64,000 nt of DNA from positions 1 to 64,000 of the IMG/VR virus record IMGVR_UViG_3300021963_000021. One strand, given 5' to 3'. Positions 4,003 through 61,470 of this stretch are shown here, in pieces. How positions within the stretch are numbered: position 1 is the first letter of the stretch; each line of letters opens with the position of its first letter. The translations under genes and the position numbers were made by a program. Under the pieces are notes generated by a model. It worked only from the letters and a program-made list of their open reading frames with translations. It was not told the origin of the DNA and made no database searches.

Positions 4003-4689
4003 ATGTTTTACAATGACAGTATTGGAACTTATAAAACTGCTGAGCAGATCAACTCAGCGATGATGCGTGTGTACAATCACATGTGCCTAGCAGTCTGTAC
4101 TTCGGCTGCGGTTGCTGGACTCACAGCCTCCAGCACTGCTCTAATGGCAGTTCTGTTTGGCACAGCTCTAAAGTGGGTCATCATCTTTGCTCCCTTGGTA
4201 GCTATCTTTGCCTTTGCTTGGGCAGCAGATCGTTTGGACCGAACGGGGTTGATCCTATTCCTACACGGTTTTGCTGCGCTGATGGGTCTTAGTATGAGCA
4301 CCATATTTGTGGTCTTTACCATGGGCAGTATCTTTTCAGCATTCATGGGTGCCGCAATCTTGTTTGCTGTGCTCAGTGGCTATGGATACTTTACCAAACG
4401 CAGTCTAGATGGTCTTGGGCAGTTTATGTTTATTGGTTTGATCGCTATCGTTATAGCATCAGTCATTAACATTTTCATAGGCAGCACTGTGATGGCCACA
4501 GTGATTTCAGCATTGGCTATCATCATCTTCTTGGGCTTGACGGCCTATGACACACAGAAGATCCGTGAGATCATCTCAGTGGGCGGTGATACAGGACGTG
4601 AAGAAGTCATTGGCGCACTGACGCTGTACTTGGACTTTATCAACCTGTTTATGAACCTACTACAGTTGATTGGCGTTAAACGTGATTGA
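4003..4689 (+). CDS. Bax inhibitor-1/YccA family 7-TM protein
   Basis: Seven hydrophobic helices; TAYDTQKI and ALTLYLDFINLF motifs. Confidence 0.9.
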   Translation: MFYNDSIGTYKTAEQINSAMMRVYNHMCLAVCTSAAVAGLTASSTALMAVLFGTALKWVIIFAPLVAIFAFAWAADRLDRTGLILFLHGFAALMGLSMSTIFVVFTMGSIFSAFMGAAILFAVLSGYGYFTKRSLDGLGQFMFIGLIAIVIASVINIFIGSTVMATVISALAIIIFLGLTAYDTQKIREIISVGGDTGREEVIGALTLYLDFINLFMNLLQLIGVKRD

Positions 4690-5789: not shown

Positions 5790-6049
5790 CCATTATTTAT
5801 CAGCCTAAGGTGTGTGCTGCGATATATGAATTCTTGGTCTACAACATCGTTGAATGTTTCTAAGACCAGCTGATTGATCTTGGTTTTTGGATCTACGTAA
5901 AGATAGCTCTGTGCGAGTTTAGCATCTAGATCTCGTATCCAACGACTGAGATCTAGACCAAGATGCTGTGCTGCTTCAGCCCAGGCTATTTTAAACTCTT
6001 TGCTGGTAGTGTCTGTCCACTGATATAGTATGTGCTTGTTACACTTCAT
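5771..6049 (-). CDS. hypothetical protein
   Basis: 92-aa ORF overlapping helicase stop. Confidence 0.55.
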   Translation of the reverse strand: MKCNKHILYQWTDTTSKEFKIAWAEAAQHLGLDLSRWIRDLDAKLAQSYLYVDPKTKINQLVLETFNDVVDQEFIYRSTHLRLINNGCEQKK

Positions 6050-7469
6050 CGCTAGAACCCAAACCGTTAATAAACTGCCTTAGTTTGGTTGATTCTACGA
6101 TTGCCTTGACTTTGCCTACTTCTACGCCTTTAGTGGGATCCTGTACGACCCCGTCATCATCTACTACTGTGCTGTTACGACTTTTGATTTGAGAAATTAT
6201 GCTTGAACTACGTTGTGAGCCTGCTTCATCTGATTGTTGATCTTCTGGAAGATCTGCGATACGCAATGTATCAATGTTGAAATCTAGATCTAGTTTTTGT
6301 CCAACACCACTGCTACTACGTGTCTTCATTAACTGGATCTGATAACGACCACGTTCACGCATAGCACGGCTTGTAAAGATACCAAACACGTTATCCGCAG
6401 TTTGAATCTTACTTAGACCACCTGAAATGTGACTGTGATCGAATTCTACTTCTTCTACAGCGCCACGATTCAACTGTGCGGCTGTGACCAACAATACCTG
6501 TTTTTCCATAGCCAAGTTACGCAATTCTTCTGACACATACTTGTCTTTGATAAACAGATTTTCTGCGGAGATCTTTTTACCTATGGGCATCAATAAGTCC
6601 AAATAGTCAACTAAAAGTACGTCTACTTTCTTGCCCATTTGTATTTCATATTCTTTTAGATACGCACGAATATCGTTGGTAGTTTTACCCGATGGCATGT
6701 ATTTGACCTGGAACATACCTGACTTCTTGCCTACTAGTTTGACTTTCATTTCAACATCGTCAATGTTCTTAAAAATGTCTTTGGTAGTCACACCTGTAAG
6801 CATCGAGTCAATACGCATAGATACCAGTGCTTCTGAAAGTTCTAATGTAAGGTACACAACATTAAGACCCATCGTAGCCCAGTTAACACCTAGATTGGCT
6901 AAGAACAAAGATTTGCCAGCACCAGATCCACCTGCCCAAATATTCAGTTCGCCTCTGTTCATACCACCAAACAGTTTACGATCCAAAGTACTCCAACCTG
7001 TAGATACCTGCCCGTTCTTGTCTTTGAGTCCCATCAGTCGTGCTCTAGGATCAGCAAAGTAGTTAGTACCCATGTCTCGAGCAAGGCCGATCTGTACAGC
7101 TTCTTTAACCAGTGCTTCTACCTGTCCGTAGTCTTTCTTTTCTAAAAGATCTGCTGATTTAATAATCGCACGTTCTAGACTCTTATGACGAGTAAACTGT
7201 TCAAAGTCATCTAAGAACCAATCCATGTGGCCGTCTTTGAGTTCACCTGGATGTGCTAGTTCAGTCTTACAGGCCGCATTGACCATGTTATATTCTGGCA
7301 GCACAGAATATTGCTCTGCGTATTGATGTACGAACTCTGCTGCTTCTTGTAGTTTGCGATCAAATAATGTGTGATCAAAAATGCCTTGGCAACGCACAAA
7401 TGTTTCTGCGTCAGCTAACATTATTTCAAGATAGAGTTTTTGTACGTCGTAGTCGTATTCTTTTATCAT
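6039..7469 (-). CDS. dnaB: DnaB/gp41-like replicative helicase
   Basis: Walker A GGSGAGKS, Walker B LLVDYLD, TAAQLNR, QLMKTR. Confidence 0.92.
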   Translation of the reverse strand: MIKEYDYDVQKLYLEIMLADAETFVRCQGIFDHTLFDRKLQEAAEFVHQYAEQYSVLPEYNMVNAACKTELAHPGELKDGHMDWFLDDFEQFTRHKSLERAIIKSADLLEKKDYGQVEALVKEAVQIGLARDMGTNYFADPRARLMGLKDKNGQVSTGWSTLDRKLFGGMNRGELNIWAGGSGAGKSLFLANLGVNWATMGLNVVYLTLELSEALVSMRIDSMLTGVTTKDIFKNIDDVEMKVKLVGKKSGMFQVKYMPSGKTTNDIRAYLKEYEIQMGKKVDVLLVDYLDLLMPIGKKISAENLFIKDKYVSEELRNLAMEKQVLLVTAAQLNRGAVEEVEFDHSHISGGLSKIQTADNVFGIFTSRAMRERGRYQIQLMKTRSSSGVGQKLDLDFNIDTLRIADLPEDQQSDEAGSQRSSSIISQIKSRNSTVVDDDGVVQDPTKGVEVGKVKAIVESTKLRQFINGLGSSDEV

Positions 7470-8426
7470 TTAACTATTATACTGTAATTCAAGATGTTTT
7501 ACAATACCTAAGTTACAGTTTATTCTCTGATTGGTGGTCAACAATGCTGCGCCGATAGCTGAACTACCGTCGCCGGGATCAGGCAATGACCATATACCTT
7601 TCCACTGTCTATTCAGCTTCTTGTTATACTTGCTGTTCATAGCACATCCGCCCATATAGACTAGATTGTCTATTGATGTATAAGAGTGTGCCAAGGCCAT
7701 AACCCAGTCTACCTGTTCTTCGAATACAGTCTGTACAGCAGCAGCAATATCAGCACGATTCTCGTCAGTGACTGGTTCGTCCCAATCCCATACACCTCTG
7801 TGTAGATTTCTATTCAGTGTCATAGGCGCATCAAAATAACCTTTGACTTTGAAATAGTATCTTTTGAAATCACCTTGATCACTGAGTTGCTGAAGCAGAT
7901 GCTCTTCTGCCAGTGGCTTGAATCCTATCAGTTTGGTGAATGCTGAGTAGAACAGGCCTAGACTGTTGGGATAAGATGCTGACCATAGTTTGGTTAATTT
8001 AGTGCCACTGCCTAACCAGATGCTGGCCGATTCCCATTCTCCAATAGCGTCTAACACTACTACTATTGCTTGATTAAATGGGCTGGTAAAAAAACCCGCA
8101 GCAGCATGTGATTTGTGGTGCGGGTGATATACTACTTTAGGATATCTTAGATTCATTGATCTTAGATAGTTGCTCGGCATCACTGACATATCCATGGCAG
8201 CATCCCATTGTCCCGCATACAACTGACGTGTCTTTTTAACCAACGGACGTTCGTACCAAGCGATAGTAGATGGACCTCGATAGCCACTGTAGTCAATGGC
8301 TTCTTTGACCATTTCTGACGTTAGGCGATCGCTGGAGTTATTCCTAATCCAATGTACGGTATCCTTGCCGCCTACTACAGCAATACTAGATCCGTGATTT
8401 AATGCGTTTACGCCCCAGACTATCAT
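7470..8426 (-). CDS. carbamoyltransferase N-terminal (Kae1-like) domain only
   Basis: HGSSIA, HHKSHAAA, DAIGE, SLGLFYS, GGCAMN, PGDGSSAIGAA; no C-terminal YrdC-like domain. Confidence 0.85.
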   Translation of the reverse strand: MIVWGVNALNHGSSIAVVGGKDTVHWIRNNSSDRLTSEMVKEAIDYSGYRGPSTIAWYERPLVKKTRQLYAGQWDAAMDMSVMPSNYLRSMNLRYPKVVYHPHHKSHAAAGFFTSPFNQAIVVVLDAIGEWESASIWLGSGTKLTKLWSASYPNSLGLFYSAFTKLIGFKPLAEEHLLQQLSDQGDFKRYYFKVKGYFDAPMTLNRNLHRGVWDWDEPVTDENRADIAAAVQTVFEEQVDWVMALAHSYTSIDNLVYMGGCAMNSKYNKKLNRQWKGIWSLPDPGDGSSAIGAALLTTNQRINCNLGIVKHLELQYNS

Positions 8427-8512
8427 TTATAGATAAAAGGATCGCGCTTACGCAGTTCACGTATCCTTCTCCTGTACTTGATATAATTGATTAACTTTCT
8501 AAATAAGTTCAT
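8423..8512 (-). CDS. 29-aa basic peptide MNLFRKLINYIKYRRRIRELRKRDPFIYK (absent from ORF track)
   Basis: ATGA overlaps at both ends (primase stop and carbamoyltransferase start). Confidence 0.75.
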   Translation of the reverse strand: MNLFRKLINYIKYRRRIRELRKRDPFIYK

Positions 8513-9504
8513 TTAACTTTTCTCTCGAACTGCTTCATATATAGATTTATCTTGATAGCACCACTGACAGCAGTATTCATGGCATCTACCATAACAAACA
8601 ATTTTCCGTATTTTGCCACAGCATCTGCGCAGTCTTTGACATCCGCATCCCAATTAGGAAATGCCACATGCCAATCATACTTTAATGCGTCTTTGATTAG
8701 ACTAGCACCTGCTCGATCTTGATCAGGAATAACAATCACAGTCTTACCTAGTTTGTTAATCAATCTTGCTTGTTCTTCTGATATCTCGTTGTGTAGTAGT
8801 GCTAGTCCTTGTACAGCAAGAGCATCAAATGGACCTTCTACAACAAATACATACTCTTGTTCTTGTGTAACACTATCCATGTTAAACACAAAATGCGGCT
8901 GTTGTTCACTGAGATATTTTGGCTTGCCTTCTTTGATCTTTCTGGCAGTCCATCCTACTATTCTTCCTGTGTATTTGAACGGTATGATTACACGCTCATC
9001 CATGCCATCTAAAGGACTCCAATAATATTCGCCTAATGGATCAATGCCCCTGCCAACAAGATAGTTAACTACGTTTGCTAGTTTTTGATCAGTATCTGCG
9101 TCCAGTTCTTGATCAATCCATTCGCTTAACAATAGACTACCTTCTGGTAAAGGTTTATCTGGAAATACTACTAGCTCTCTTTTTTGTTCTTTTACTTCAG
9201 GAGCTTCTGCTCTAAGAGCTTCGAATACCATCTTGTTGATATCGTCTTCAGGAGCACCTAACCAACGCATGAAGTTTTTTAGTTTTTGACCGATCTGTCT
9301 GCCTGGTTTCCAACTGGCTGTATATCCGCAGTTGAAACAGTTAAAGACTAGTCCTTCAGAAAATATCACACCACCACGTTGACGATTGTCTGCGGTATGC
9401 CCTCTATGATGACAACAGGGAGCATTGAAGCTAACCCATCCACTGGGTGTTTTTTTGCTTCGATGCGGTAAATGTTGTTTGAATATATCGACTACCAGAC
9501 TCAT
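8509..9504 (-). CDS. DNA primase (gp61/DnaG-like)
   Basis: Zn finger (CFNCG), IIPF...GWTAR, PKYL, TOPRIM VEGPFDA and PDQD. Confidence 0.9.
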   Translation of the reverse strand: MSLVVDIFKQHLPHRSKKTPSGWVSFNAPCCHHRGHTADNRQRGGVIFSEGLVFNCFNCGYTASWKPGRQIGQKLKNFMRWLGAPEDDINKMVFEALRAEAPEVKEQKRELVVFPDKPLPEGSLLLSEWIDQELDADTDQKLANVVNYLVGRGIDPLGEYYWSPLDGMDERVIIPFKYTGRIVGWTARKIKEGKPKYLSEQQPHFVFNMDSVTQEQEYVFVVEGPFDALAVQGLALLHNEISEEQARLINKLGKTVIVIPDQDRAGASLIKDALKYDWHVAFPNWDADVKDCADAVAKYGKLFVMVDAMNTAVSGAIKINLYMKQFERKVK

Positions 9505-9510
9505 GTATAC

Positions 9511-9539
9511 ATTTTAATATCTGTATAGCACTTTGTCAA
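9511..9539 (-). promoter_or_regulatory. sigma70-type promoter for primase (leaderless)
   Basis: TTGACA-17bp-TAAAAT, 6 nt before ATG, no SD. Confidence 0.75.
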
Positions 9540-46964: not shown

Positions 46965-49900
46965 TTAGGCTTGCGCTTCTGCCCAACGTAGAATAATGTT
47001 AGCTGGTGTAGCTGTTCCAGATACCTTATACACGTTGATAGCCAAAACGTCTGGTCCGTTCGGGAATGTACCACGTCCGCCTAACGCAGTTGTAGTCAAT
47101 TCTTTAAGTTCGCCTAGGTTCAACGCATCAGTTGATCCTGGGTTTGTAATGAACGAGAAGATCGTTTCGCCCGGTAGCGCATATGGTGGTAAACCAAATT
47201 GGAACTGTACTGTGGTAGACCCTCCAGTAACCACAACGTTAGTAGTTTGTGTAAAGGTTACTGTATAATATGGCGTTCCTGAGAATGTCTGTAATGTGCT
47301 CACTGACTGTACACGAGTACCAGCAGGGAATTTGGTTTCAGTTGTGGCAACTTCAGTGTTAGCCGATGCTCCAGACGATTCCCACGATGCTTGTGTAAAG
47401 TAAATCGTAGAAGTGTTAGCAGTTGACTGTGCTAGCTGGAATGTGATGTTATTGGTGTTGCTAATTGCGCTGGTCGATGCTCTACTAAATGACAGTGTAT
47501 AATACAGTGTAGTATTAAATGTCACTGTTCCGCTAGCAGACACAACGGCTGTATTTCCTGCGTTAAATGTCACAGCATAATAACTAGTACCAGCAAATGT
47601 TCTCAGTGTGCTCACAGAGCTAATTTGAGTACCGCCGCCAAATTTAGCATCGTTAGTTGTCTGACCTGCGATAATATCAACAGGTAACGCAGCCCAACTT
47701 GACTGTTGGAAGAAGTGTATAGTATTTCCAATTGCTCTAGTACCAGCAAATCTAAATGATACTGTCGAGTTATTATTAACTTGACGGAGTGTTGATGTGC
47801 TAAAGCTCACGGTGTAAAACCCACCACTTGGGCCTGTTACTGCTGTAACATAAGTTCCATCAACAAACAACGACGTATCATTAGTAAAGATATCAGTAGC
47901 AGTAGTAGAACCTTGTAGTGCTGCCCACGAAGCCTGTAAGAAATATAACACATTGCTTGGAGCACCAATAGTAAACGCAGATACTGATGTTGATTGTAAT
48001 AATGGTAAAGTAGTTGCTGTTGGATTTGGGCTGTCTGTCTTGCCAGATACTGTAGTACCCGACGGAAACTTAACGTCATTAACAGATTGTCCTACCACGG
48101 CAGCAATGCTGTCCCAACTGGTTCTTGTCACATAAGCAATAGTAGTACCGCTAGATCTATTAAATGCTGCGCCAGTTGGCACAGTGGCATTACCAGTTAC
48201 AGTACCTAATGCTGTAGCAGTAGTAAATGTATACGAGCCACCACCTGCCCAGTTAACAGAACCGCCAGGAGCAATCTGTGCGAAGCTAGGCTGTCCACCT
48301 TGCGCTAGTCCGTTTAATTTACCCCAGGTAATATCTCCTGGGTTAGTTGGATAGTTTTGTGGATTCAACACACCTTCAATAACCACTCCGCCAGTGCCTG
48401 CGTCTGAAGCGATTGAAATCTCTTTCAATAACAACTGCGCTCTGTTTAACAGTTCACGCTCGCCTAGATCTCCAACAACAGCGTTAGACACGCTAGGTGC
48501 TAGTCGAATCAAGAACACAGTCTTTTTAGTAGTCGAAATTGAGTTACCAGTTGATGTATAACTGAATAGATAACCGCGGTCTTCGTCAAATCTACCGTCT
48601 GTCAAGAACGCAGAACCCCAGTGACTAATCAAAGGTGTTGTTGTATTTGTTAATAATATTACACCTGTTCTTGATGTATGTGATGTAGCTATACCTGCTC
48701 GGTAACTTCTTAACGCACCAGATTGATAGTTAGTTAACTGTGCTGCTCGAGTAGCGCCAGTTAAGGCTGTCGCTGTTTTACCTGAGTAACTGATTAATTC
48801 ATTATCGACATAAACTACACCCGTGTCTGGATAGAACTGAGTGTCTTCAATAGGAATAGTTGTGTCTAAGGCAGTTATGTCAGCAGTTAGTCTTTCAGCT
48901 GGGCCATAGTTAGCTACCTCGTATCGCACTGGCAAGTTACCAGTTCTCATGAACGCTTCTGAGTTCACGTTACTGTTACGCATACGATGAGCAAAAACAA
49001 AGTTACCATCTCCGCCACGTAGCATAAAGTCAATAAATCCAGCACCGTACCAAGTATATTGGATACCGATCATCTGCATTTTTGTAATATCAACATCGTA
49101 GCCGCTAGGACCGGTACCGTCTAGTCTGTCTCTATTGAACTGACTCTGAGGGACACGTTTATCAAACACCAAACAGATCTTAGTTCCGCTGACTGCGCTG
49201 ACTCCTCTGAAGTCTGGATTCACAGTCATTGAAGTGTTAGATGCTACCGCCGTGACTACGTGAGTCATTCCCTTAACTACCACAAAGTCGCCTGCTTTGA
49301 CTTGATCTAAGAATCGAGAGTTACTACCAGTTATGGTATTACTACCAGGCAATATAGAAATCGTGCCAGCTAGCTGCTTGGTAGCAGTTCTTTGTACAAC
49401 TGCTAGTTCAGTGCCGTTATATTCCCAAAACACACCGTTTTGATCATCAAACGCACCTGCTCTAACTACTGCGCCTTTCCAATTTAACGTTGATACCTGA
49501 CAGCTGAATCCTAGTGTTGGAATTTTTGAACCTAATCGTCTAACTGCCTTAACTCGGAACACTCGTTCACTGACAATTTCGTCAACTGTGTAATCTTCAC
49601 CAGGATAAAATTCATTACCACTGTCATATCCTGGAGTATCTACTCCAGTGATACGCACCACAGCACCTGCTTGGAATCCGTGATCGTTTTCGTCTAGAGT
49701 AATTGTTATAGTAGAACCGACTTCCACTCCATCAGAGACAATATTCTGTATGTCGTAACTAGGGGCAAATAGCGCACCGGTGGTGTACATCATGCCTTTA
49801 CCAGATTGGTAACGAATGTATTTTTTACTTTGACGTATTGCCTGTACACCGTGCTGCGGACCGCCTGTGCCTAGTTGTACACCACCGTCGAAGGGTCTAT

Positions 49901-52900
49901 GTGTAAAGAAGCTGTCTGGTCTAGCATAGACTCTACCAGTAATAGTGCCAGCAATAGTACCCGATGCTCTGGCCTGATAGCTTAGAGCTGTTGCTGTTGG
50001 TATTGAAGTTGCTGTATATGATCCGCCGGCAAGTGTATGATTGTTAGAACCGTTGTCTGAAGATGGCACAACAATAAAGGCTCCGCCCGGTGGTATACCA
50101 TGCGCTGCTAAGAAATCTATACGTATCGTTGCCAACGCAGCATACGTCAATGTCGTTGATGAAGGCACAGCTCCTGTTGTGAATTCACTGACAGTGATTG
50201 CTGAATACAGCGAGAATGTAGTACCTGCTGAAGCAGTATGCGATCCTACAGTTATGTTAACAACTCCGCCTAGGGTAACATTTGAAACAGTTAGAACAAC
50301 ATCGTTAGTTGGACTTGCGCCACCAAGGGTAGCACCTGATAACTGTATCTTATTACCGATGTAATAATTAGTCCCGCCAGTTGCTGCTACTACAGAACTG
50401 TATGCGCTGCTAGATCTTGTTAGATTAAATGTTGCTCCGTTGCCTCTAGAAGCTGTGTTTGTTCCAGCCACTCCTGTGTAGGTAATTTGATAACTGGCAG
50501 TTCCAGAAACGCTAGCTTCTGTAATCGCGCCAGACTGGTTACTTGCTGCGCCTGTTACAGAGAAGTTTGTTATACCGCCAGTGACATTAGCTGCTGTCAC
50601 TGTGATTGTTAAATCGTTGGCTGTTGTTGAACCACCTAACTGTGTACCGTAGATCGTTAATGTATCTGCGGAATTATAACCAGATCCTGGGTTTGTTAGA
50701 GTCACAAAATATTCAGTGCCGTTCCTGATAACAGTAAATGTCGCTGCTGACCCAGTACCAGAAGTCAGGTCTTGAATAATGCTAGTGTAAGTAGCTGAAA
50801 CTTTAGATACTGTAATAGTAGCGTTATTTGACGGTGTTGATCCGTAGGTAAATGTTGTCCCAGGAACTGTAAACGATTCACCTGCTGAATAATTTGAACC
50901 GGCAGTGGTAACGTTAACTGTATAAGCGTTGCTGCGAGTTATTGAAAACACAGCACCTGTGCCTGCTGCCGAAGTTGTATAAACAGTGCTATCAATGCCA
51001 GTTACTGTTTGATTAGCAATGGCAAGAGCTGTTCCTTGGATCACTGTCACGGCTGAGATAGCACTGCCTGATAATGTTTCAACGTTTAGATACAGGTCGT
51101 TGGCTGTGGATGTTCCACCGAGATCTGTACCTAGTATTACGATAGTGTCACCAACAGCGTATCCGGATCCTCCGGCATTAACTGTTACTGTAGAATAGTT
51201 AGTAGTGTTATCTCGCAAGACATTAAATGTTGCGCTAGATCCTGTGCCTACAACGTTAGTACCTGCTATACCTAGATAGTTAACATTATTACCTTTGATG
51301 CTAGCAGTCAAAGGATCTGTAAACACTAATGTAAGGCCCTGTATATCCGAAATGAATATGTTATTACCTGATCCGTCGTTGACTGCTAGACCAATTTGTA
51401 CACCGACTGTGCTGGTCACATCAACTTGTGTAGTTCCAGAAGGATAATCGGCGGTCAATAAAGGTGTTGTCACAACACCTCCAGTACCAAGCACTGAAGT
51501 TATCTGTGAACCTACACCGAGATTCGTACCGGTTATAGGAGCACCAATTTCTGGTGCTGTGCCTGTGAACGCAAATCTATTAGAACCACTCGGTGCTGCT
51601 AATGATGTTGTCACTGTACCGCTAGTACCGTTGCTGATAACGGAAAATGTTGGTGTACCAATTTCAGCACCAGTATAAAAACCGCCTTGACGTACCTGTG
51701 AAAATGCTGTGGCCAATGCTGTGGGATTGCTCGATCCTACTCGTGCTTTGGCATAGTATGTAAATGATTTAGTAGTCGGTACTGAAGTAACAATAAATGA
51801 CCCCTCAGCACGTGAAACTCCACTGATAGCCTGAGTAAGACCTCTCACAGTAATAGGCTGACCAACAGCAAATCCGTGTACAGCGTTTGTCGTTACTGTA
51901 ATCAAACTGCCGCCGATGCCACTGGTGCCCACTGACGCATCTGAAACAATGCTAACTATATCTTGATCAGTACCCGGGACTTCATAGATACTTGGATATC
52001 CTCTCGCTACTGCGATAGCCTGCCACTTGGTTGGCTGTAAGCCGTATTCAAAGTCAGCGTCAAGCATGGCCTGCGGCGGAGCAACACGCATACGTTCAAT
52101 AGCATCTGTGCCAAAGTCGTATGGACGTACTGACATATCTTTGGTTTCTACAAATATCTGTATCTCATCATCTTCGGTCATTGAAGATGTGTCACAGTTT
52201 AATTTAATAGTCGTTACACCGTCAGTGGCCTGTAAGAATTTTACAAAGTCCTCGTCTTCAACAGTCTCTTGTGTAACGGTTCCGCCGATAGCAGGATTAG
52301 AGAAATTATAAATGATTACGTTTGCGGTCGTGTTTGTGATCAATAATAGATCATCACTACCAGCTTTACCTTGGAATTTAATTCTACCATAGGTGTTTGG
52401 AATTGCTGCTGCTAACAAGCTCAGACCGCCAGGAATAACAGTTAACACTATATTAGATAGTTCTACAATTCTCGCGGCAGCTCCTGCTTCTGGAGATCCA
52501 GTCAATACAACCTGAGGTGTAGATGTCTGGTATGGTACAGTTCTATATGAAGGATACGAAGGCAACGAACTAGTGCCAACCAACAATAGATTAATTAATA
52601 AATCCGATAACGCAGTGATTCGTGTTGTAGCACCTGTTTCAGCGAACGGAGATGTTCTAACCTGAGCATAGGTATTCTGGAATGACGGAGCAGCTATACC
52701 TGTTAAAATATAGTTGTTTATAGTGTTTCTTAAAAACGTATGAGCATAAGCTTCTGGATATCTATCGCCGTCAACTTGTGCTTCGTTTCCATAATAGTAT
52801 TTTGATACAACACGATATGTTTCTTCATTTCCATTGTATTGTAAGTCATAGATGTATGCGTCGATAACATAACCGGAATCTCTAATACACTTAGCACTGT

Positions 52901-56994: not shown

Positions 56995-58821
56995 TTAGCT
57001 ATTTGCTATTTTTACCAACTTACCGTATTCTGGCAAGTATAGGTATTCAATATCGCTGCGTACTAGCGTATCTATAGCATCATCTAGTGTTTCTACTAGT
57101 GGGTCGCCACCTAAATTAAAGCTGGTGTTAAACAAGATAGGAATACCTGTTTCTTCTTTGAATGCTTTGATTAGATCATAGTAATGTTTGTTTTGCTCTT
57201 GTGTAACTGTCTGTATACGACAAGTGCCATCAACGTGAATAATACTTGGGATCTTTTCAGCAATACCGGGCTTACAATTTACAGCATACATCATGTGAGG
57301 GCTTGAACCCATTCCTCGCAGATCAAACCACTCATGAACATCGTCTTGTAGAATAGATCCTGCGAAGGGTCTAAAATACTCGCGACGTTTGACCATGTTT
57401 ACGAAGTCTTTTCCATCTTCAAAAGTTGGATCAAAAAGCACACTTCTGTTACCAAGTGCTCTAGGACCGTTCTCACTGCGTCCTTGGAAAATAGTAACAA
57501 TATTTTTTTCACGCAACAATTTAACAACATCTTTATGTGTAGCATCAGTCATTGTTCCGTCTGCAAACTTAACTTTTTCTTCTATTTCATCGACAGTGTA
57601 GATCTGTTCTGGGCCAAGATACAGCGTATCTAACTTGTGAACAGTCATGTTATCATCTAAAGCATGCCAGAACATCAAAGCAGCACCCATAGCAGTACCA
57701 GCATCATTGGAAATTGGTTCTACATAAATTTCGATGCCGTCTTTTTCTAAATGTTCTAGATAGAAATAATTGGCCACACAGTTTAGGCCGTAGCCGCCAC
57801 TGATAACTACACGCTTCTTGCCGCTCATTGCTGAGGCTTTACGAATCAAATTCAGTACCTGTTCCTGTGTCTGAGTTTGTACAGCATAGGCCAAGTCTCT
57901 TCTATTCTGTAGTGTAGTCACATCAGTTTTTTCATCTGTAGGATTTTCATCTAAGAATTCAAACATATCTGCGTTAACTGTAGAACTTGACGGATACATT
58001 GGTATGATCAAATTTCTATTTGACACAGGAAACTTTGCGTTAGATTCAAACAGCGGAGGAATCTTATCGTTAGGTTTACCATATGGAAATAGTCCCATAG
58101 TTTTTCCAGCTTCGATAGCTGAAAATCCACAGTACTCAGTTACACCTTCGTAGGTCTTAACAATGCCAGCACGGTCTGTTACCCATGCTTCGTGTGTTTC
58201 GCCCTGTTCACCAAATTGGTCAGAAGCTAACTTGTCATAATACTGCGCAGGAATACCTTCTCTAGTTCCATAGTGTTTATACAATGTTTTAAACTGTGAA
58301 GGATAGTTACAGTCAACAATAGATTCTACTTCATACGACCATATCTGTTGTCCGTTAAATGACAGTGGAATAAAAGTTCCTGCTCCGTCAACAATAAGTG
58401 CTACAGCATCTTCCCATCCTGAACGATAAAACGCACAGGCAGCATGTAGTTTGTGATGCATAAAGCTGAGATCAATAATCTGTGGGTGATTATAGATATT
58501 GGCTTTACGATCAATTAATCCCATCTTACGAGCTAGACCAGTATAGACATCGTCACCGGTATAGTCGACTCTGCCAGCTGTGTCGCCAAGTTTTTGTGTG
58601 TGAGCAATGATCAAATAATCTAACTTGTCTGTATATTCTAAAATTTTCATTATAGACGCATACGGACCGCCGTCATACTTGTGTCTTGTTAGTCGTTCTT
58701 CCTCAATAGAAAATACGATTTCACCATCTTTTAATAAGCAAACACCAGCATTATGGCCACGAGCTACGGCTGCGATCCAACCGCTTTTTAATCTTGGAGT
58801 TAAATCTTGTTGTTCGTTCAT
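56995..58821 (-). CDS. carbamoyltransferase (NodU/CmcH family), full length
   Basis: EEERLTR.K, HHKLHA, DGAG, GKTMGL, GPRALGNRS, KRREYFRPFA, HVDGT.R.Q, NTSFN. Confidence 0.93.
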   Translation of the reverse strand: MNEQQDLTPRLKSGWIAAVARGHNAGVCLLKDGEIVFSIEEERLTRHKYDGGPYASIMKILEYTDKLDYLIIAHTQKLGDTAGRVDYTGDDVYTGLARKMGLIDRKANIYNHPQIIDLSFMHHKLHAACAFYRSGWEDAVALIVDGAGTFIPLSFNGQQIWSYEVESIVDCNYPSQFKTLYKHYGTREGIPAQYYDKLASDQFGEQGETHEAWVTDRAGIVKTYEGVTEYCGFSAIEAGKTMGLFPYGKPNDKIPPLFESNAKFPVSNRNLIIPMYPSSSTVNADMFEFLDENPTDEKTDVTTLQNRRDLAYAVQTQTQEQVLNLIRKASAMSGKKRVVISGGYGLNCVANYFYLEHLEKDGIEIYVEPISNDAGTAMGAALMFWHALDDNMTVHKLDTLYLGPEQIYTVDEIEEKVKFADGTMTDATHKDVVKLLREKNIVTIFQGRSENGPRALGNRSVLFDPTFEDGKDFVNMVKRREYFRPFAGSILQDDVHEWFDLRGMGSSPHMMYAVNCKPGIAEKIPSIIHVDGTCRIQTVTQEQNKHYYDLIKAFKEETGIPILFNTSFNLGGDPLVETLDDAIDTLVRSDIEYLYLPEYGKLVKIANS

Positions 58822-59762
58822 TTCTTATGTTTTCCTAAAACAGCATCAACGACATAATCTATAATTTCAGGCGTCATTGACATTAGATTTTCATGCTTTC
58901 TATCTATACGTTCGTCCATTGTAATACGTATAGGGCTGTATTCACGCAGTTCTTCGCCCATGTCTAATACATTAAAGTTTTTGGCATTAGGATATGAAAC
59001 GTTTATAGGATAGGTAGAACCAAATACCACAGTTGATGGCTTATCCATTGCGTAGGCCAAGTGCTGGCCTAGACTATCACAACCTAAGAAATGATCTGCG
59101 TATTTGATTACAGCAGCCCATTGACGTATACTGATATTTTCAGGGAACGCAATTTCATCTTTGATAGTTTTTTCTTGAGTTAGGTCTAGTTTTATTTCGC
59201 TCATCATTATTACAGCAAATCCTTTTTCCTGTAACTTCTGTATGATTTTCTTAACATCTTTGTATTCAATACTGCGAGCAGTTCTGTCTACAAACGATTC
59301 GTCGAGATATTCTATGCCTCTACCAAACGGCTGGAATACAATTACTTTTTCTTTTTTTAATTTCTTTTTAACTTCAGCAATTAGTTGACGACCGGCAATT
59401 AATTCATCCTTGCTGAGTCTCAACGTAGGTCTTGGTAATTCTCTAATACCCTGCTTGTTTAATTCGATATCAATGGCTTGGCTAATACTACATTTTTGAT
59501 TGTAATATTCCCAGACACGATACGGTTCAATTGTGTAGATATCTTTGTCTTTGAGTTTCTCTACGAACAGATTCTTGTGCCAAACGTCATAGGTTCTAGC
59601 ATCAAGGGTGGGGTGTCCTTTAAACACATCTGTGCCACCTTCGCAAACGATAATAAAATCTTTATCTCCGGACTCTTGTTCGTACTTTTCAAAAGCAGGT
59701 ACTGAACAAAGCATACGGCCTGCGCCGCCATTAATAAAGAATGCTTTAGAGCGTTTTTCCAT
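58818..59762 (-). CDS. GT9-like (ADP-heptose-type) glycosyltransferase
   Basis: GGAGR, VFQPFG, IKYADHFLGCDSLGQHLA, STVVFGST. Confidence 0.7.
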   Translation of the reverse strand: MEKRSKAFFINGGAGRMLCSVPAFEKYEQESGDKDFIIVCEGGTDVFKGHPTLDARTYDVWHKNLFVEKLKDKDIYTIEPYRVWEYYNQKCSISQAIDIELNKQGIRELPRPTLRLSKDELIAGRQLIAEVKKKLKKEKVIVFQPFGRGIEYLDESFVDRTARSIEYKDVKKIIQKLQEKGFAVIMMSEIKLDLTQEKTIKDEIAFPENISIRQWAAVIKYADHFLGCDSLGQHLAYAMDKPSTVVFGSTYPINVSYPNAKNFNVLDMGEELREYSPIRITMDERIDRKHENLMSMTPEIIDYVVDAVLGKHKK

Positions 59763-60507: not shown

Positions 60508-61470
60508 TCAAAAGAATCTAATGCGTACAGCACCATGACCGCCACGTCCTGCGTGATCTCTATGGTCTGGACAAGGTCTCGGTGCCCACCCACCAATTCC
60601 CGGTGGAATGTAAGGAGTACAGCCCTGCATTTCATAACAGCCACATGCTCGGTCTGAACGCCAGCAGTAACTCATTGGAATTCCTACCTGCGGACTTCTT
60701 GACATAGCAGCCACAGCATTCATGGACTGCATTTTTCCTTGACCGTTCATACCGTTTGAGTGTCTGTTATCGTCCTCGGTTTGCCAAGAAGCAGCACCAC
60801 CGTTACAGCCGTATAATCCAGGAGGCGCAGCGACCCAATACTGGAAGCAACAGGTACATGTTGGTTGACATCCGTTAAACGATGTACAACTAAATGCGCC
60901 ACAGCAGTTAACATCGCCGCCAAATCCGCAGGCAATCCAAATACCTGAGAAGTAATTACAGATCAAACCGCAGTTATCATTATATGGTCCACGAGCACAA
61001 TAGCCGTTAGCAGCAAAACAGCAGAACAAAGAAGTACCTGTTGAGCAGAAAGAACGGCCGCCTGCCCCACCTTGGGCGCACATACAGCCGTTAGCACCAG
61101 CGGCTCCTTGCCAACATAGGGCAGTTGAATCTGAACATCCTCGGAAACAGATAGCATCTGCGTTACCGCAGCTCATTCCAACACCGCCGCAGATAGTTTT
61201 ACCTGCGCAAACTGATATTGTTCTCTTAGAATACGCACCAGCATTACCTGGCAATCCGCCACCGCAGCAGCACATACGAGCACCACTACCACCGGCACCC
61301 CATATTTCTATGACTGCTGTGCCTGTGCCTGGTGCTATCCAGCAAAATCCTGTACATAAGTTAGTGTAAAAAGTAGATGGCGTATAGACCCAGATTCTAC
61401 CCTGTTGGATATTGTCTTCTTCTCTACCTATTGATCGCTGTCTAACCAGCATTTGTAATGATGACGGCAT
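60508..61470 (-). CDS. Gly/Cys-rich virion protein, paralog A
   Basis: EIWGAGGSG...GGHGAVRIRF glycine-rich domain; about 33 Cys in 320 aa. Confidence 0.75.
   Translation of the reverse strand: MPSSLQMLVRQRSIGREEDNIQQGRIWVYTPSTFYTNLCTGFCWIAPGTGTAVIEIWGAGGSGARMCCCGGGLPGNAGAYSKRTISVCAGKTICGGVGMSCGNADAICFRGCSDSTALCWQGAAGANGCMCAQGGAGGRSFCSTGTSLFCCFAANGYCARGPYNDNCGLICNYFSGIWIACGFGGDVNCCGAFSCTSFNGCQPTCTCCFQYWVAAPPGLYGCNGGAASWQTEDDNRHSNGMNGQGKMQSMNAVAAMSRSPQVGIPMSYCWRSDRACGCYEMQGCTPYIPPGIGGWAPRPCPDHRDHAGRGGHGAVRIRFF

What the first reader, a model, noticed from the sequence alone, without database searches (positions are those of the whole stretch)
7470..8512. Hidden 29-aa PFIY peptide couples primase to a half-carbamoyltransferase inside the primase-helicase operon
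Seen: an unannotated ORF 8512-8423 (MNLFRKLINYIKYRRRIRELRKRDPFIYK) overlaps both neighbours by ATGA. The next gene has only the Kae1-like N-domain of a carbamoyltransferase and ends flush against the helicase start; a full-length paralog sits 49 kb away. Established: the C-terminal YrdC-like domain makes carbamoyl-AMP; small SxtK/DUF5989 proteins ending in PFIY.. accompany bacterial carbamoyltransferases; some phage carbamoyltransferases modify 5hmC. Inference: a split or trans-complemented transferase with a peptide partner or substrate, possibly acting on nascent DNA, or transferring a different acyl group.
Basis: partly seen in the sequence, partly recalled or inferred. Interest (0 to 1): 0.6.

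Follow-up and report, generated by a model that had tools for sequence, protein, structure and literature searches.

The report
Micropeptide-partnered half carbamoyltransferase in jumbo phage
A 29-residue, very basic peptide ending in DPFIYK is a real, strongly conserved gene that always travels with one clade of carbamoyltransferases in phages and bacteria, and in this freshwater jumbo phage its enzyme partner has long ago lost its donor-making half while keeping the catalytic transfer half.

Summary
On the minus strand lie primase (9504-8509), a 29-aa ORF (8512-8423, ATGA overlap at both ends), a 318-aa carbamoyltransferase (CT) with only the Kae1-like N-domain (8426-7470), then the DnaB-like helicase (TAAATG junction). 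A full-length CT lies at 58821-56995.

The half-gene is not a recent truncation. Half-CTs form one well-supported clade in about 350-kb freshwater jumbo phages. dN/dS is 0.08, and the general-base His and four iron ligands are invariant.

The peptide was found in all 68 related half-CT loci. Its D-P-(F/Y)-I-Y codons vary only at third positions.

The same basic tail accompanies the sister full-length CTs in phages and bacteria. In some bacteria it is fused, through a linker predicted to be flexible, to the C-terminus of DUF6071 (SGNH-like) enzymes. Pfam DUF5989/SxtK does not match it, so the likeness rests on motif and gene context.

The primase-helicase position is an insertion; Pseudomonas phage PA5oct has the two genes adjacent. 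In some relatives the pair sits inside a radical-SAM gene cluster instead. I found no 5hmC pathway genes.

Best reading: a docking micropeptide plus a transfer-only CT that needs carbamoyl-AMP supplied in trans. The acceptor is unknown.

The parts
8423..8512 (-). 29-aa basic micropeptide (net charge +9, no transmembrane segment) with the invariant C-terminal D-P-F-I-Y-K. It is translationally coupled (ATGA) to the primase upstream and the half-CT downstream.
   Evidence: ORF and overlaps; conservation in 68/68 half-CT loci, invariant D, P, I, Y; codon positions 1 and 2 invariant, position 3 variable; 15 of 16.3 synonymous sites changed against 5 of 70.7 non-synonymous sites, compared with the L176 relative whose half-CT is 84% identical; charge, hydropathy
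7470..8426 (-). Half carbamoyltransferase: the Kae1-like (ASKHA) transfer domain only, 318 aa. The general-base His11 and the Fe ligands His103, His107, Asp126 and Asp286 are retained. There is no YrdC-like domain.
   Evidence: Pfam/NCBIfam; best 120 homologs are 307-352 aa, N-domain only; invariant residues mapped onto GdmN H27, H133, H137, D156, D333; AF2 pLDDT 94.6; best folds are the Kae1-like domains of GdmN, NovN, VtdB and TobZ; single clade; dN/dS 0.08
8509..9504 (-). DnaG/Toprim-type primase, the upstream gene of the operon
   Evidence: weak Toprim_2, DNAG_N and Toprim hits; homolog directly upstream in 60/68 loci; the PA5oct gene at this position is annotated 'DNA primase subunit'
6039..7469 (-). 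DnaB-like replicative helicase. It starts directly after the half-CT stop codon.
   Evidence: DnaB_C E 6e-19; 51% identity to the PA5oct DnaB-like helicase
9511..9539 (-). Promoter-like site (11 of 12 consensus matches) just upstream of the primase start. No minus-strand terminator-like site lies within 6039-9504.
   Evidence: This is a consensus match only; the number of promoter-like sites is not above the shuffled expectation.
56995..58821 (-). Full-length class III carbamoyltransferase (608 aa, Kae1-like plus YrdC-like domains). It is the only carbamoyl-AMP-forming domain encoded by the phage and the candidate trans donor.
   Evidence: A full-length CT co-occurs with the half-CT in 4 of 4 near-complete genomes.
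58818..59762 (-). Family 9 glycosyltransferase-like gene overlapping the start of the full-length CT, giving that CT a glycan-type context
   Evidence: Glyco_transf_9 E 2.7e-8

Best explanation
The 29-aa ORF encodes a real micropeptide that is the dedicated small partner of one clade of class III carbamoyltransferases. Its conserved part is a basic stretch followed by a C-terminal (D)P(F/Y)(I/L)Y(K/P) motif. This acts as a short docking tail. It is free in phages and many bacteria, and in other bacteria it is attached by a flexible linker to the C-terminus of the neighbouring DUF6071 (SGNH-like) enzyme. Because the peptide stays with the enzyme after the YrdC-like domain was lost, its binding site should lie on the Kae1-like domain (inferred).

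The half-CT arose once, long ago, from a peptide-linked full-length CT. It keeps the complete metal and general-base transfer site. It most likely still transfers a carbamoyl (or related acyl) group from an adenylate that it cannot make itself. The only phage-encoded source of that adenylate is the full-length CT 49 kb away, which co-occurs in every near-complete genome (inferred).

The pair was inserted as a cassette between primase and helicase. There it is co-transcribed and translationally coupled, which would give roughly equimolar peptide and enzyme. Its pathway partners are more likely the phage's radical-SAM and sugar-modification genes than the replisome. The acceptor is unknown.

Shown: existence, conservation, linkage, a single ancient domain loss, purifying selection, an intact catalytic site, and natural fusions. 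Inferred: physical binding, the binding site, the trans donor, and the pathway. The confidence given is for the whole statement. For the shown parts alone it would be about 0.9, for physical binding to the Kae1-like domain about 0.6, and for the trans-donor step about 0.35.
For: Peptide
- It is present in 68/68 half-CT loci, almost always with an ATGA overlap onto the CT start.
- D, P, I and Y are invariant, and their codons vary only at position 3.
- Against the relative L176 (half-CT 84% identical), synonymous sites are saturated and there are only 3 conservative residue changes.
- The pair persists where primase and helicase are absent (L008, L009, L036 and others).
- The same tail lies next to about 475-497-aa full-length CTs in viral contigs, in RsoM2USA, in a marine virus and in bacteria from several phyla.

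Fusions
- DUF6071 plus the basic ...DPFIYP, DPFLYP or RDFLYP tail occurs in Magnetococcales, in an Actinobacteria MAG and in Streptomyces. AF2 gives the tail pLDDT below 50, so it is predicted to be flexible.
- DUF5989 is likewise fused to an SGNH/AlgX-like protein in a Planctomycetota MAG (L140), giving a parallel architecture.
- DUF6071-like neighbours occur in 30/46 bacterial loci of the basic-peptide clade against 1/34 loci on the DUF5989 side.

Complex prediction
- ipSAE was 0.44, and the best of 3 controls was 0.00. The tool's verdict was 'weak support'.
- The mark was reached by 58 of 80 solved complexes and 2 of 110 mismatched pairs. A score of 0.60 or under was given by only 7 of those 80, and by both mismatched pairs that passed.
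- The runs agree in 100% of contacts, and the partner's pLDDT is at least 71.
- The calibration holds only roughly here, because my own alignments were used and the partner is under 30 aa.

Half-CT
- It forms one clade of 63 rows (SH-aLRT 99) nested in a 120-row peptide-linked clade (SH-aLRT 100).
- dN/dS is 0.082, against 0.043 for primase and 0.044 for helicase.
- H11, H103, H107, D126 and D286 are invariant. They correspond to GdmN H27, H133, H137, D156 and D333 (PMC9633730).
- In GdmN crystals, AMP, ATP and carbamoyl-AMP bind in the Kae1-like domain.

Donor
- The genome has no second PF16861 match and no PF01300 match.
- A full-length CT is present in 4 of 4 near-complete genomes that carry a half-CT.

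Context
- PA5oct has primase and helicase adjacent.
- In G002 (L036), L008, L009 and L064 the pair lies among radical-SAM genes homologous to those of the G000 240-264 kb cluster.
- The abundant 33-aa form sits with a 491-aa CT amid 5-6 radical-SAM/SPASM genes.
Against: - No direct evidence of translation or binding exists. The complex score counts only as weak support, and no interface was returned.
- RNA-library contigs cover the locus but cannot prove transcription.
- Carbamoyl-AMP is labile, and in TobZ and GdmN it is passed within one protein. Transfer in trans from a 25%-identical CT of another clade is unproven. Co-occurrence in 4 related genomes is weak statistically.
- The full-length sisters also keep the peptide, so the peptide does not compensate specifically for the lost domain.
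- Characterised class III CTs (TobZ, GdmN) work in vitro without any peptide.
- Two related loci (L007, L038) have an interrupted half-CT ORF.
Confidence: 0.5

Rival explanations
1. The peptide is the substrate or a carbamoyl carrier rather than a structural partner. Its flexible C-terminal tail would enter the Kae1-like active site, and Tyr28 (or Lys29) would be carbamoylated. This would parallel HypF, whose Kae1-like domain carbamoylates the C-terminal Cys of HypE. The aryl carbamate would then pass the group on, for example to the SGNH-like DUF6071 enzyme or to a final acceptor.
For: - The Tyr lies one or two residues from the C-terminus and is invariant.
- In the fusion proteins the tail sits on a Pro/Ala-rich linker that is predicted to be disordered, like a swinging arm.
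- Free and fused forms both neighbour a CT.
- The HypF/HypE relay is established knowledge, recalled and not tested here.
Against: - It does not solve the donor problem of the half-CT.
- ATGA coupling gives roughly stoichiometric synthesis, which suits a subunit. This is not decisive.
- In the saxitoxin literature SxtI, acting with SxtJ and SxtK, is assigned a small-molecule acceptor (PMC2679770).
- No chemistry was tested.
Confidence: 0.17
2. The half-CT is a split DNA-modifying enzyme. It would carbamoylate a hydroxylated base (as the 5hmC carbamoyltransferase does) on nascent DNA at the replisome, and the basic peptide would tether it to DNA or to primase and helicase.
For: - The pair is placed between primase and helicase in 60/68 loci and is translationally coupled to primase.
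- The peptide has a net charge of +9.
- A phage CT makes 5-carbamoyloxymethylcytosine and prefers single-stranded DNA (PMC8670742).
- About 10 relatives carry a 2OG-Fe(II) oxygenase between the half-CT and the helicase.
Against: - The genome has no thymidylate-synthase-like hydroxymethylase (PF00303) and no Tet_JBP match. The Tet_JBP search lacked a positive control.
- The characterised enzyme is a full-length 63-kDa protein linked to a TS-like gene.
- The same peptide-CT pair occurs in bacteria and in radical-SAM or DUF6071 contexts with no replication genes.
- PA5oct shows that the replication operon works without the pair.
Confidence: 0.08
3. The half-CT no longer transfers carbamoyl groups. 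With its peptide it would be a nucleotide- or adenylate-binding protein with another role, for example capturing or hydrolysing host threonylcarbamoyl-AMP or carbamoyl-AMP, or using a different acyl-adenylate.
For: - It encodes no adenylate-forming domain of its own.
- The Kae1-like fold binds AMP, ATP and acyl-AMP on its own.
- Its fold neighbours include TsaD, Kae1 and Qri7, which use TC-AMP made by a separate protein.
Against: - The general-base His and all four metal ligands are invariant across a deeply diverged clade. This is expected for a working transferase.
- It scores far below the TsaD/Kae1 family thresholds.
- There is no evidence about any host target.
Confidence: 0.15
4. The peptide is a RiPP precursor matured by the radical-SAM/SPASM enzymes, and the CT is a tailoring enzyme of that pathway.
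For: - The 33-aa form and some half-CT pairs lie inside clusters of 4-6 radical-SAM/SPASM genes.
- The G000 cluster also contains an Asp/Asn hydroxylase-like gene.
- In L173 a CT is fused to a radical-SAM domain.
Against: - Most loci with the peptide have no radical-SAM-like gene nearby: only 4/46 bacterial, 2/19 viral full-length and 5/68 half-CT loci do.
- The motif also occurs as the C-terminal tail of a 270-320-aa enzyme. That does not fit a leader-core precursor.
- The universal link is to the CT, not to radical-SAM genes.
Confidence: 0.05

Closest known systems
SxtK / DUF5989 (Pfam PF19451) small proteins next to O-carbamoyltransferase genes, e.g. sxtI-sxtJ-sxtK of the saxitoxin cluster
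   Same: Both are very small proteins encoded beside a class III CT. Both have an N-terminal amphipathic basic segment and a C-terminal xPF(I/V)Yxx motif. In some genomes both types are fused to the C-terminus of an SGNH-like protein beside the CT. [quoted passage not shown]
   Different: DUF5989 has a central transmembrane helix (19-residue mean hydropathy 2.2-2.8) and ends in ...APFIYTLF. The phage peptide has a charged helix in that position (hydropathy -0.8, net charge +9) and ends in ...RDPFIYK. The Pfam HMM does not match it, and hhalign gives 5% probability. The two types accompany different CT clades.
Class III O-carbamoyltransferases TobZ, GdmN, NovN, VtdB, NodU
   Same: The N-domain is the same Kae1-like transfer domain (Foldseek TMq 0.69-0.79; profile E 3.5e-31 to NovN). 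It keeps the Fe-binding His-His-Asp-Asp residues and the general-base His.
   Different: Those enzymes are two-domain proteins that make carbamoyl-AMP in their own YrdC-like domain. They are active in vitro without a peptide. The half-CT has no YrdC-like domain, and its clade always carries the peptide.
TsaC/Sua5 plus TsaD/Kae1/Qri7 (t6A synthesis), where the adenylate maker and the transferase are separate proteins
   Same: This is a precedent for a Kae1-fold transferase that receives a labile acyl-adenylate made by a separate YrdC-fold protein. Such transferases also depend on small partner subunits (TsaB, Pcc1). It is the next-best fold match.
   Different: The sequence scores are far below the TsaD family thresholds. 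The phage encodes no stand-alone YrdC/Sua5. The partner here is a 29-aa peptide, not a TsaB or Pcc1 fold.
Phage 5-hydroxymethylcytosine carbamoyltransferase (Yang et al. 2021, eLife, PMC8670742)
   Same: It is a phage-encoded class III CT.
   Different: That enzyme is a full-length 63-kDa protein. It is genetically linked to a thymidylate-synthase-like hydroxymethylase, and the paper does not mention a partner peptide. Here there is no TS-like gene, and the enzyme is N-domain only.
HypF-HypE carbamoyl relay in [NiFe]-hydrogenase maturation (recalled, not tested)
   Same: A Kae1-like domain acts on the flexible C-terminal tail of a partner protein. It is a possible model for the invariant near-C-terminal Tyr.
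   Different: The acceptor there is a C-terminal Cys of a 35-kDa protein, and HypF carries its own YrdC-like domain. There is no sequence relationship to the peptide.

Membership tests
Class III O-carbamoyltransferase (TobZ/NodU/GdmN type) | Kae1-like (ASKHA) N-terminal transfer domain, Pfam PF02543 | tested here: met
   PF02543 E 5.5e-32. AF2 pLDDT 94.6, with the best Foldseek hits on GdmN, NovN, VtdB and TobZ.
Class III O-carbamoyltransferase (TobZ/NodU/GdmN type) | YrdC-like C-terminal domain that makes carbamoyl-AMP, Pfam PF16861 | tested here: not met
   The 318-aa protein has no PF16861 match. The only genomic match lies in the 608-aa ORF. The best 120 homologs are all 307-352 aa with PF02543 only.
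Class III O-carbamoyltransferase (TobZ/NodU/GdmN type) | Fe site His-His-Asp-Asp and general-base His in the Kae1-like domain | tested here: met
   H11, H103, H107, D126 and D286 are invariant in 39 sequences. They align to GdmN H27, H133, H137, D156 and D333.
DUF5989 / SxtK (PF19451) | Match to the family HMM | tested here: not met
   There is no hit at E up to 10 for the window peptide or for 5 relatives. The six-frame genome search found none. Transmembrane-type peptides from bacterial CT loci hit at 1e-16 to 1e-25, which serves as a positive control. hhalign probability is 5%.
DUF5989 / SxtK (PF19451) | Single central transmembrane helix | tested here: not met
   The maximum 19-residue Kyte-Doolittle mean is -0.83 for the window peptide (family median -0.63), against 2.2-2.8 in DUF5989.
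DUF5989 / SxtK (PF19451) | C-terminal PF(I/V)Y motif and a gene next to a carbamoyltransferase | tested here: met
   DPFIYK against APFIYTLF. CT adjacency holds for both types.
TsaD/Kae1/Qri7 t6A transferase | Score above the family thresholds (PF00814, TIGR00329, TIGR03723) | tested here: not met
   PF00814 scores 13.5 bits against a cut-off of 24.8. TIGR00329 scores 21.4 against 207.8.
Phage 5hmC carbamoyltransferase system | Two-domain CT co-encoded with a thymidylate-synthase-like dCMP hydroxymethylase (or a TET-type oxygenase) | tested here: not met
   There is no PF00303 match in the complete 364-kb genome; the controls matched in 10 of 14 genomes. There is no PF12851 match, but that search had no positive control.
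RiPP precursor with radical-SAM/SPASM maturase | Precursor peptide consistently co-located with its maturase, and a free leader-core peptide | tested here: not met
   Radical-SAM-like genes lie nearby in only 5/68 half-CT, 2/19 viral full-length and 4/46 bacterial loci. The motif also occurs as the C-terminal tail of DUF6071 enzymes.
HypF/HypE-type carbamoyl relay onto a C-terminal tail | Covalent carbamoylation of a residue in the partner's C-terminal tail | not testable with these tools
   It needs mass spectrometry. The only indirect support is the flexible tail and the invariant Tyr.

The most novel reading that the evidence does not exclude
The DP(F/Y)(I/L)Y tail is a protein-borne carbamoyl carrier. 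The Kae1-like domain would load the invariant tyrosine as an aryl carbamate, and the free or enzyme-tethered tail would deliver the group to a second active site or acceptor. This would be a HypF/HypE-like relay, using tyrosine, that has not been described. It would be widespread in phages and bacteria, and the jumbo-phage half-CT would be a stand-alone loading or unloading module. It would also give SxtK-type proteins their first mechanistic role.
Probability: 0.12. Interest if true: 0.85.

Novelty: new variant of a known kind. Interest (0 to 1): 0.62.

Why it matters
- Small accessory proteins of carbamoyltransferases (SxtJ, SxtK, DUF5989) have had no assigned function since the saxitoxin cluster was described.
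- This locus supplies a natural dissection. The peptide stays with the Kae1-like half after the adenylate-forming half was lost, which points to where the peptide acts.
- Natural fusions to SGNH-like DUF6071 enzymes show that the motif is a modular tail.
- The peptide family is very large (more than 5000 sequence clusters), has no Pfam match, and was not found in the literature searched. Defining it would improve annotation of many phage and bacterial genomes, Streptomyces included.
- A transfer-only CT conserved across a whole clade of about 350-kb freshwater phages implies either a split carbamoylation pathway or a new use of the Kae1 fold in phage biology.

Tried and rejected
- **Recent truncation or relaxed selection.** Rejected. 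The half-CTs form a single deep clade, dN/dS is 0.08, and the catalytic residues are invariant.
- **A hidden C-domain elsewhere.** A six-frame PF16861 search found only the 608-aa gene. There is no PF01300 match. The roughly 200-aa neighbour of the pair in L036 and L064 looked by eye like a Rossmann-type SAM methyltransferase, not a YrdC-like domain.
- **DUF5989 membership.** Rejected.
- **The peptide ORF as a sequence-independent coupling spacer.** Rejected, because of protein-level conservation, its occurrence downstream of some CTs, and its occurrence as fused tails.
- **tblastn of the 29-mer against phage records.** No match. The cause is probably the short, low-complexity query. Homologs were found by reading the loci directly.
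- **The search for homologous proteins with the 29-mer.** It was rerun with a 43-aa relative as the first sequence.
- **DUF6071 in this genome.** No match, but the search had no positive control.
- **The L006 2OG oxygenase in this genome.** No match.
- **Megablast of the locus against phage records.** No match.
- **Intramolecular docking of the fused tail.** AF2 leaves the tail disordered.
- **Reads.** RNA-library contigs cover the locus, but they cannot prove transcription or show strand.

Full report
**1. What is in the sequence**

On the minus strand, four ORFs are packed without spacers:
- A 331-aa Toprim/DnaG-like primase (9504-8509).
- A 29-aa ORF (8512-8423), MNLFRKLINYIKYRRRIRELRKRDPFIYK.
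- A 318-aa protein (8426-7470) that matches only Pfam Carbam_trans_N (E 5.5e-32).
- A 476-aa DnaB-like helicase (7469-6039).

The peptide ATG overlaps the primase TGA, and the peptide TGA overlaps the next ATG (ATGA both times). The half-CT TAA is followed at once by the helicase ATG.

A 608-aa ORF at 58821-56995 has both CT domains and overlaps a GT9-like gene.

The window is the first 64 kb of a 363,943-bp IMG/VR virus record that CheckV rates as complete. Its helicase is 51% identical to that of Pseudomonas jumbo phage PA5oct. Near-identical DNA occurs in freshwater, riverine and estuary metagenomes, and in two runs labelled marine, from 18 studies.

**2. The half-gene is an old, selected family, not a fresh truncation**

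The word-index search returned 6791 relatives. The best 120 are all 307-352 aa, 54-84% identical, and carry PF02543 only.

I fetched 68 related half-CT loci. All lie on contigs that are fragments or whole genomes of the same roughly 350-kb phage clade (CheckV 16-100%).

I built a maximum-likelihood tree of 143 N-domains.
- The half-CTs form one clade of 63 rows with SH-aLRT 99.
- That clade is nested in a 120-row clade (SH-aLRT 100, stem 0.83) of about 475-497-aa full-length CTs from viral contigs and bacteria.
- The 608-aa 'paralog' is only 25% identical and served as the outgroup. It is not the parent of the half-gene.

Against a relative whose half-CT is 84% identical and which has the same gene order (L176), dN/dS is 0.082 for the half-CT, 0.043 for primase and 0.044 for helicase.

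In 39 diverse sequences, H11, H103, H107, D126 and D286 are invariant. A profile alignment to NovN and GdmN, read with the GdmN paper (PMC9633730), identifies them as the general base (H27) and the four iron ligands (H133, H137, D156, D333). That paper also reports that AMP, ATP and carbamoyl-AMP bind in the Kae1-like domain.

AF2 models the protein with pLDDT 94.6. Foldseek places it on the Kae1-like domains of GdmN, NovN, VtdB and TobZ (TMq 0.69-0.79), and then on TsaD, Kae1 and Qri7.

**3. The peptide is a real gene**

All 68 half-CT loci carry it. Nearly all have the ATGA overlap. In L017, L052 and their duplicates it ends 7-8 nt before the CT. In L054 and L063 about 0.7 kb is inserted between the two genes.

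D, P, I and Y of the tail are invariant. Across 56 distinct 39-nt tails, codon positions 1 and 2 of D, P, I and Y never vary, while position 3 does (for example CCT 13, CCA 21, CCG 22).

Against L176, 15 of 16.3 synonymous sites have changed, but only 5 of 70.7 non-synonymous sites (K>R, Y>W, R>K).

It is the only ORF with such a tail in the 364-kb genome.

Contigs from three metatranscriptome libraries span the primase end, the peptide and the CT start with 0-1 differences. This is compatible with one transcript but does not prove it. A promoter-like site precedes the primase, and no terminator-like site interrupts the four genes.

**4. The peptide belongs to the CT, not to the replisome**

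Primase lies upstream in 60/68 loci and helicase downstream in 56/68. Eight loci carry the peptide and half-CT pair elsewhere.

PA5oct has primase and helicase directly adjacent. The pair is therefore an inserted cassette.

In L036 (a 353-kb, 99%-complete relative), L008, L009 and L064, the pair lies among radical-SAM-motif genes. Their homologs in this genome map to a cluster at about 240-264 kb: 37-68% identity for the L036 genes and 23-30% for those of L008 and L064. That cluster holds at least nine Pfam-confirmed radical-SAM genes (two with SPASM), an Asp/Asn-hydroxylase-like gene, an NDP-sugar epimerase/dehydratase and a 2OG oxygenase.

A profile of the peptide finds 5167 clusters in the protein collection. 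They are mostly 33-45 aa, all are named 'hypothetical protein', and none has a Pfam domain. The abundant 33-aa form overlaps (ATGA) a 491-aa full-length CT amid 5-6 radical-SAM/SPASM genes.

The same tail lies next to full-length CTs in several other places:
- A marine virus (L002).
- RsoM2USA, where it is unannotated.
- Viral contigs, where it is sometimes immediately downstream of the CT.
- Bacteria including Reyranella, Edaphobacter, Geodermatophilus and Streptomyces.

Variant tails also occur: DPHLYK, PPMLYK, PRKYIY and DSYIYD.

**5. Relation to DUF5989/SxtK**

More distant CTs (24-30% identical, from Pelagibacterales, Planctomycetota and others) are accompanied by 43-58-aa peptides ending in ...APFIYTLF. 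These are bona fide DUF5989 members (E 1e-16 to 1e-25).

The phage-type peptide does not match that HMM, and hhalign gives 5% probability. It has no hydrophobic span and a net charge of +9. Membership is therefore not met.

The likeness has four parts: small size, a basic amphipathic N-terminus, a PF(I/V)Y end, and a neighbouring CT.

One further parallel is informative. Both types occur fused to the C-terminus of SGNH-like proteins beside the CT.
- DUF6071 plus a basic ...DPFIYP, DPFLYP, NFIYP or RDFLYP tail is found in Magnetococcales, Rubrivivax, an Actinobacteria MAG and six Streptomyces genomes.
- An SGNH/AlgX-like protein plus DUF5989 is found in a Planctomycetota MAG (L140). Two other long ORFs (L154, L150) also end in a DUF5989 match.

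DUF6071-like genes neighbour 30/46 bacterial CTs of the basic-peptide clade, against 1/34 on the DUF5989 side. In the fusions the tail follows a Pro/Ala-rich linker, and AF2 predicts it to be disordered (pLDDT below 50).

**6. Mechanism**

The tail behaves as a modular C-terminal motif that works with the CT. The peptide survived loss of the YrdC-like domain, so its site of action should be the Kae1-like domain (inference).

The ESMFold2-based test gave 'weak support'.
- ipSAE was 0.44, and the best of 3 controls was 0.00.
- The mark was reached by 58 of 80 solved complexes and 2 of 110 mismatched pairs.
- Scores of 0.60 or under were given by only 7 of those 80, and by both mismatches that passed.
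- The runs agree in 100% of contacts, and the partner's pLDDT is at least 71.
- The calibration holds only roughly here, because my own alignments were used and the partner is under 30 aa. No interface was returned.

The half-CT has an intact transfer site but cannot make carbamoyl-AMP. The genome has no second PF16861 match and no YrdC/Sua5 domain. A roughly 600-aa full-length CT is present in all four near-complete genomes that carry a half-CT. Supply of the adenylate in trans is the simplest working model, and t6A synthesis is a precedent for separate maker and user proteins. It is not shown.

A DNA target is unsupported. There is no TS-like hydroxymethylase and no Tet_JBP match (that search had no positive control). 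The characterised 5hmC CT is a full-length enzyme linked to a TS-like gene (PMC8670742).

The carrier or substrate reading, analogous to HypF-HypE, remains open. It is the most novel possibility.

**7. Novelty**

No paper in the searched library contains the tail motifs or describes a peptide-partnered half-CT. I rate it a new variant of a known kind: a CT with an SxtK-like accessory.

It has three new elements:
- A soluble basic tail family.
- Fusions of that tail to DUF6071 enzymes.
- A monophyletic transfer-only CT family in jumbo phages.

Noticed in passing
window 4003-4689 (+): Phage-encoded Bax inhibitor-1/YccA-family membrane protein (PF01027, E 2e-49), the only plus-strand gene in this stretch.
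   Followed up: no
G000 about 240,000-264,000 (outside the window; loci L178, L179): Large cluster with at least nine Pfam-confirmed radical-SAM genes, two of them with a SPASM domain. It also holds an Asp/Asn beta-hydroxylase-like gene, an NDP-sugar epimerase/dehydratase and a 2OG-Fe(II) oxygenase fused to a cold-shock domain. In relative G002 the peptide and half-CT pair sits inside the orthologous cluster.
   Followed up: partly
L182 (PA5oct NC_071039, 143432-151844): In the nearest cultured relative by helicase similarity, primase gp261 is directly followed by helicase gp260. The peptide and half-CT pair is therefore an insertion in the freshwater clade. No PA5oct-type record appeared among the five phage records that matched the half-CT.
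   Followed up: yes
L001 3026-3148 (Ralstonia phage RsoM2USA MG752970, reverse strand): Unannotated ORF in this gap, ending ...IRKQDPFIYK. It lies between two DUF6071 genes and upstream of the full-length CT gp199. A radical-SAM gene lies just upstream.
   Followed up: partly
L104, L114, L116, L119, L120, L124 (Streptomyces); L127, L128, L133: DUF6071 (SGNH-like) proteins carry a Pro/Ala-rich linker and a basic C-terminal ...RDFLYP or ...DPFIYP tail. In Streptomyces the gene lies about 3 kb from the CT on the opposite strand.
   Followed up: partly
L173 5099-7630: An 843-aa ORF that fuses Carbam_trans_N and C to a radical-SAM domain. In sister contigs these are a 491-aa CT and a separate 424-aa radical-SAM gene. 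It could be a true fusion or a frameshift.
   Followed up: no
P0121 (65 aa, one 673-bp contig): One ORF holds two tandem peptide units (...EEDPFIYK, then a second complete unit ending RDPFIYK). The motif is therefore not always at the very C-terminus, or two genes have been joined.
   Followed up: no
L006 5979-6593, and the equivalent gap in L012, L013, L019, L023, L034, L035: In L006 an extra roughly 200-aa 2OG-Fe(II) oxygenase (PF13759) lies between the half-CT and the helicase. About nine other loci have a gap of similar size there, whose content I did not check. No homolog of the L006 gene was found in this genome.
   Followed up: partly
L007 5001-5961; L038 4001-4444: The half-CT reading frame is interrupted in these two contigs. 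This is either assembly error or occasional pseudogenisation.
   Followed up: no
window 60508-61470 (-) and 46965-54791 (-): A 320-aa ORF with a CxxxCxxC motif lies close to the full-length CT and the GT9 gene; it had no Pfam hit. A 2608-aa ORF lies further along. Neither was examined.
   Followed up: no
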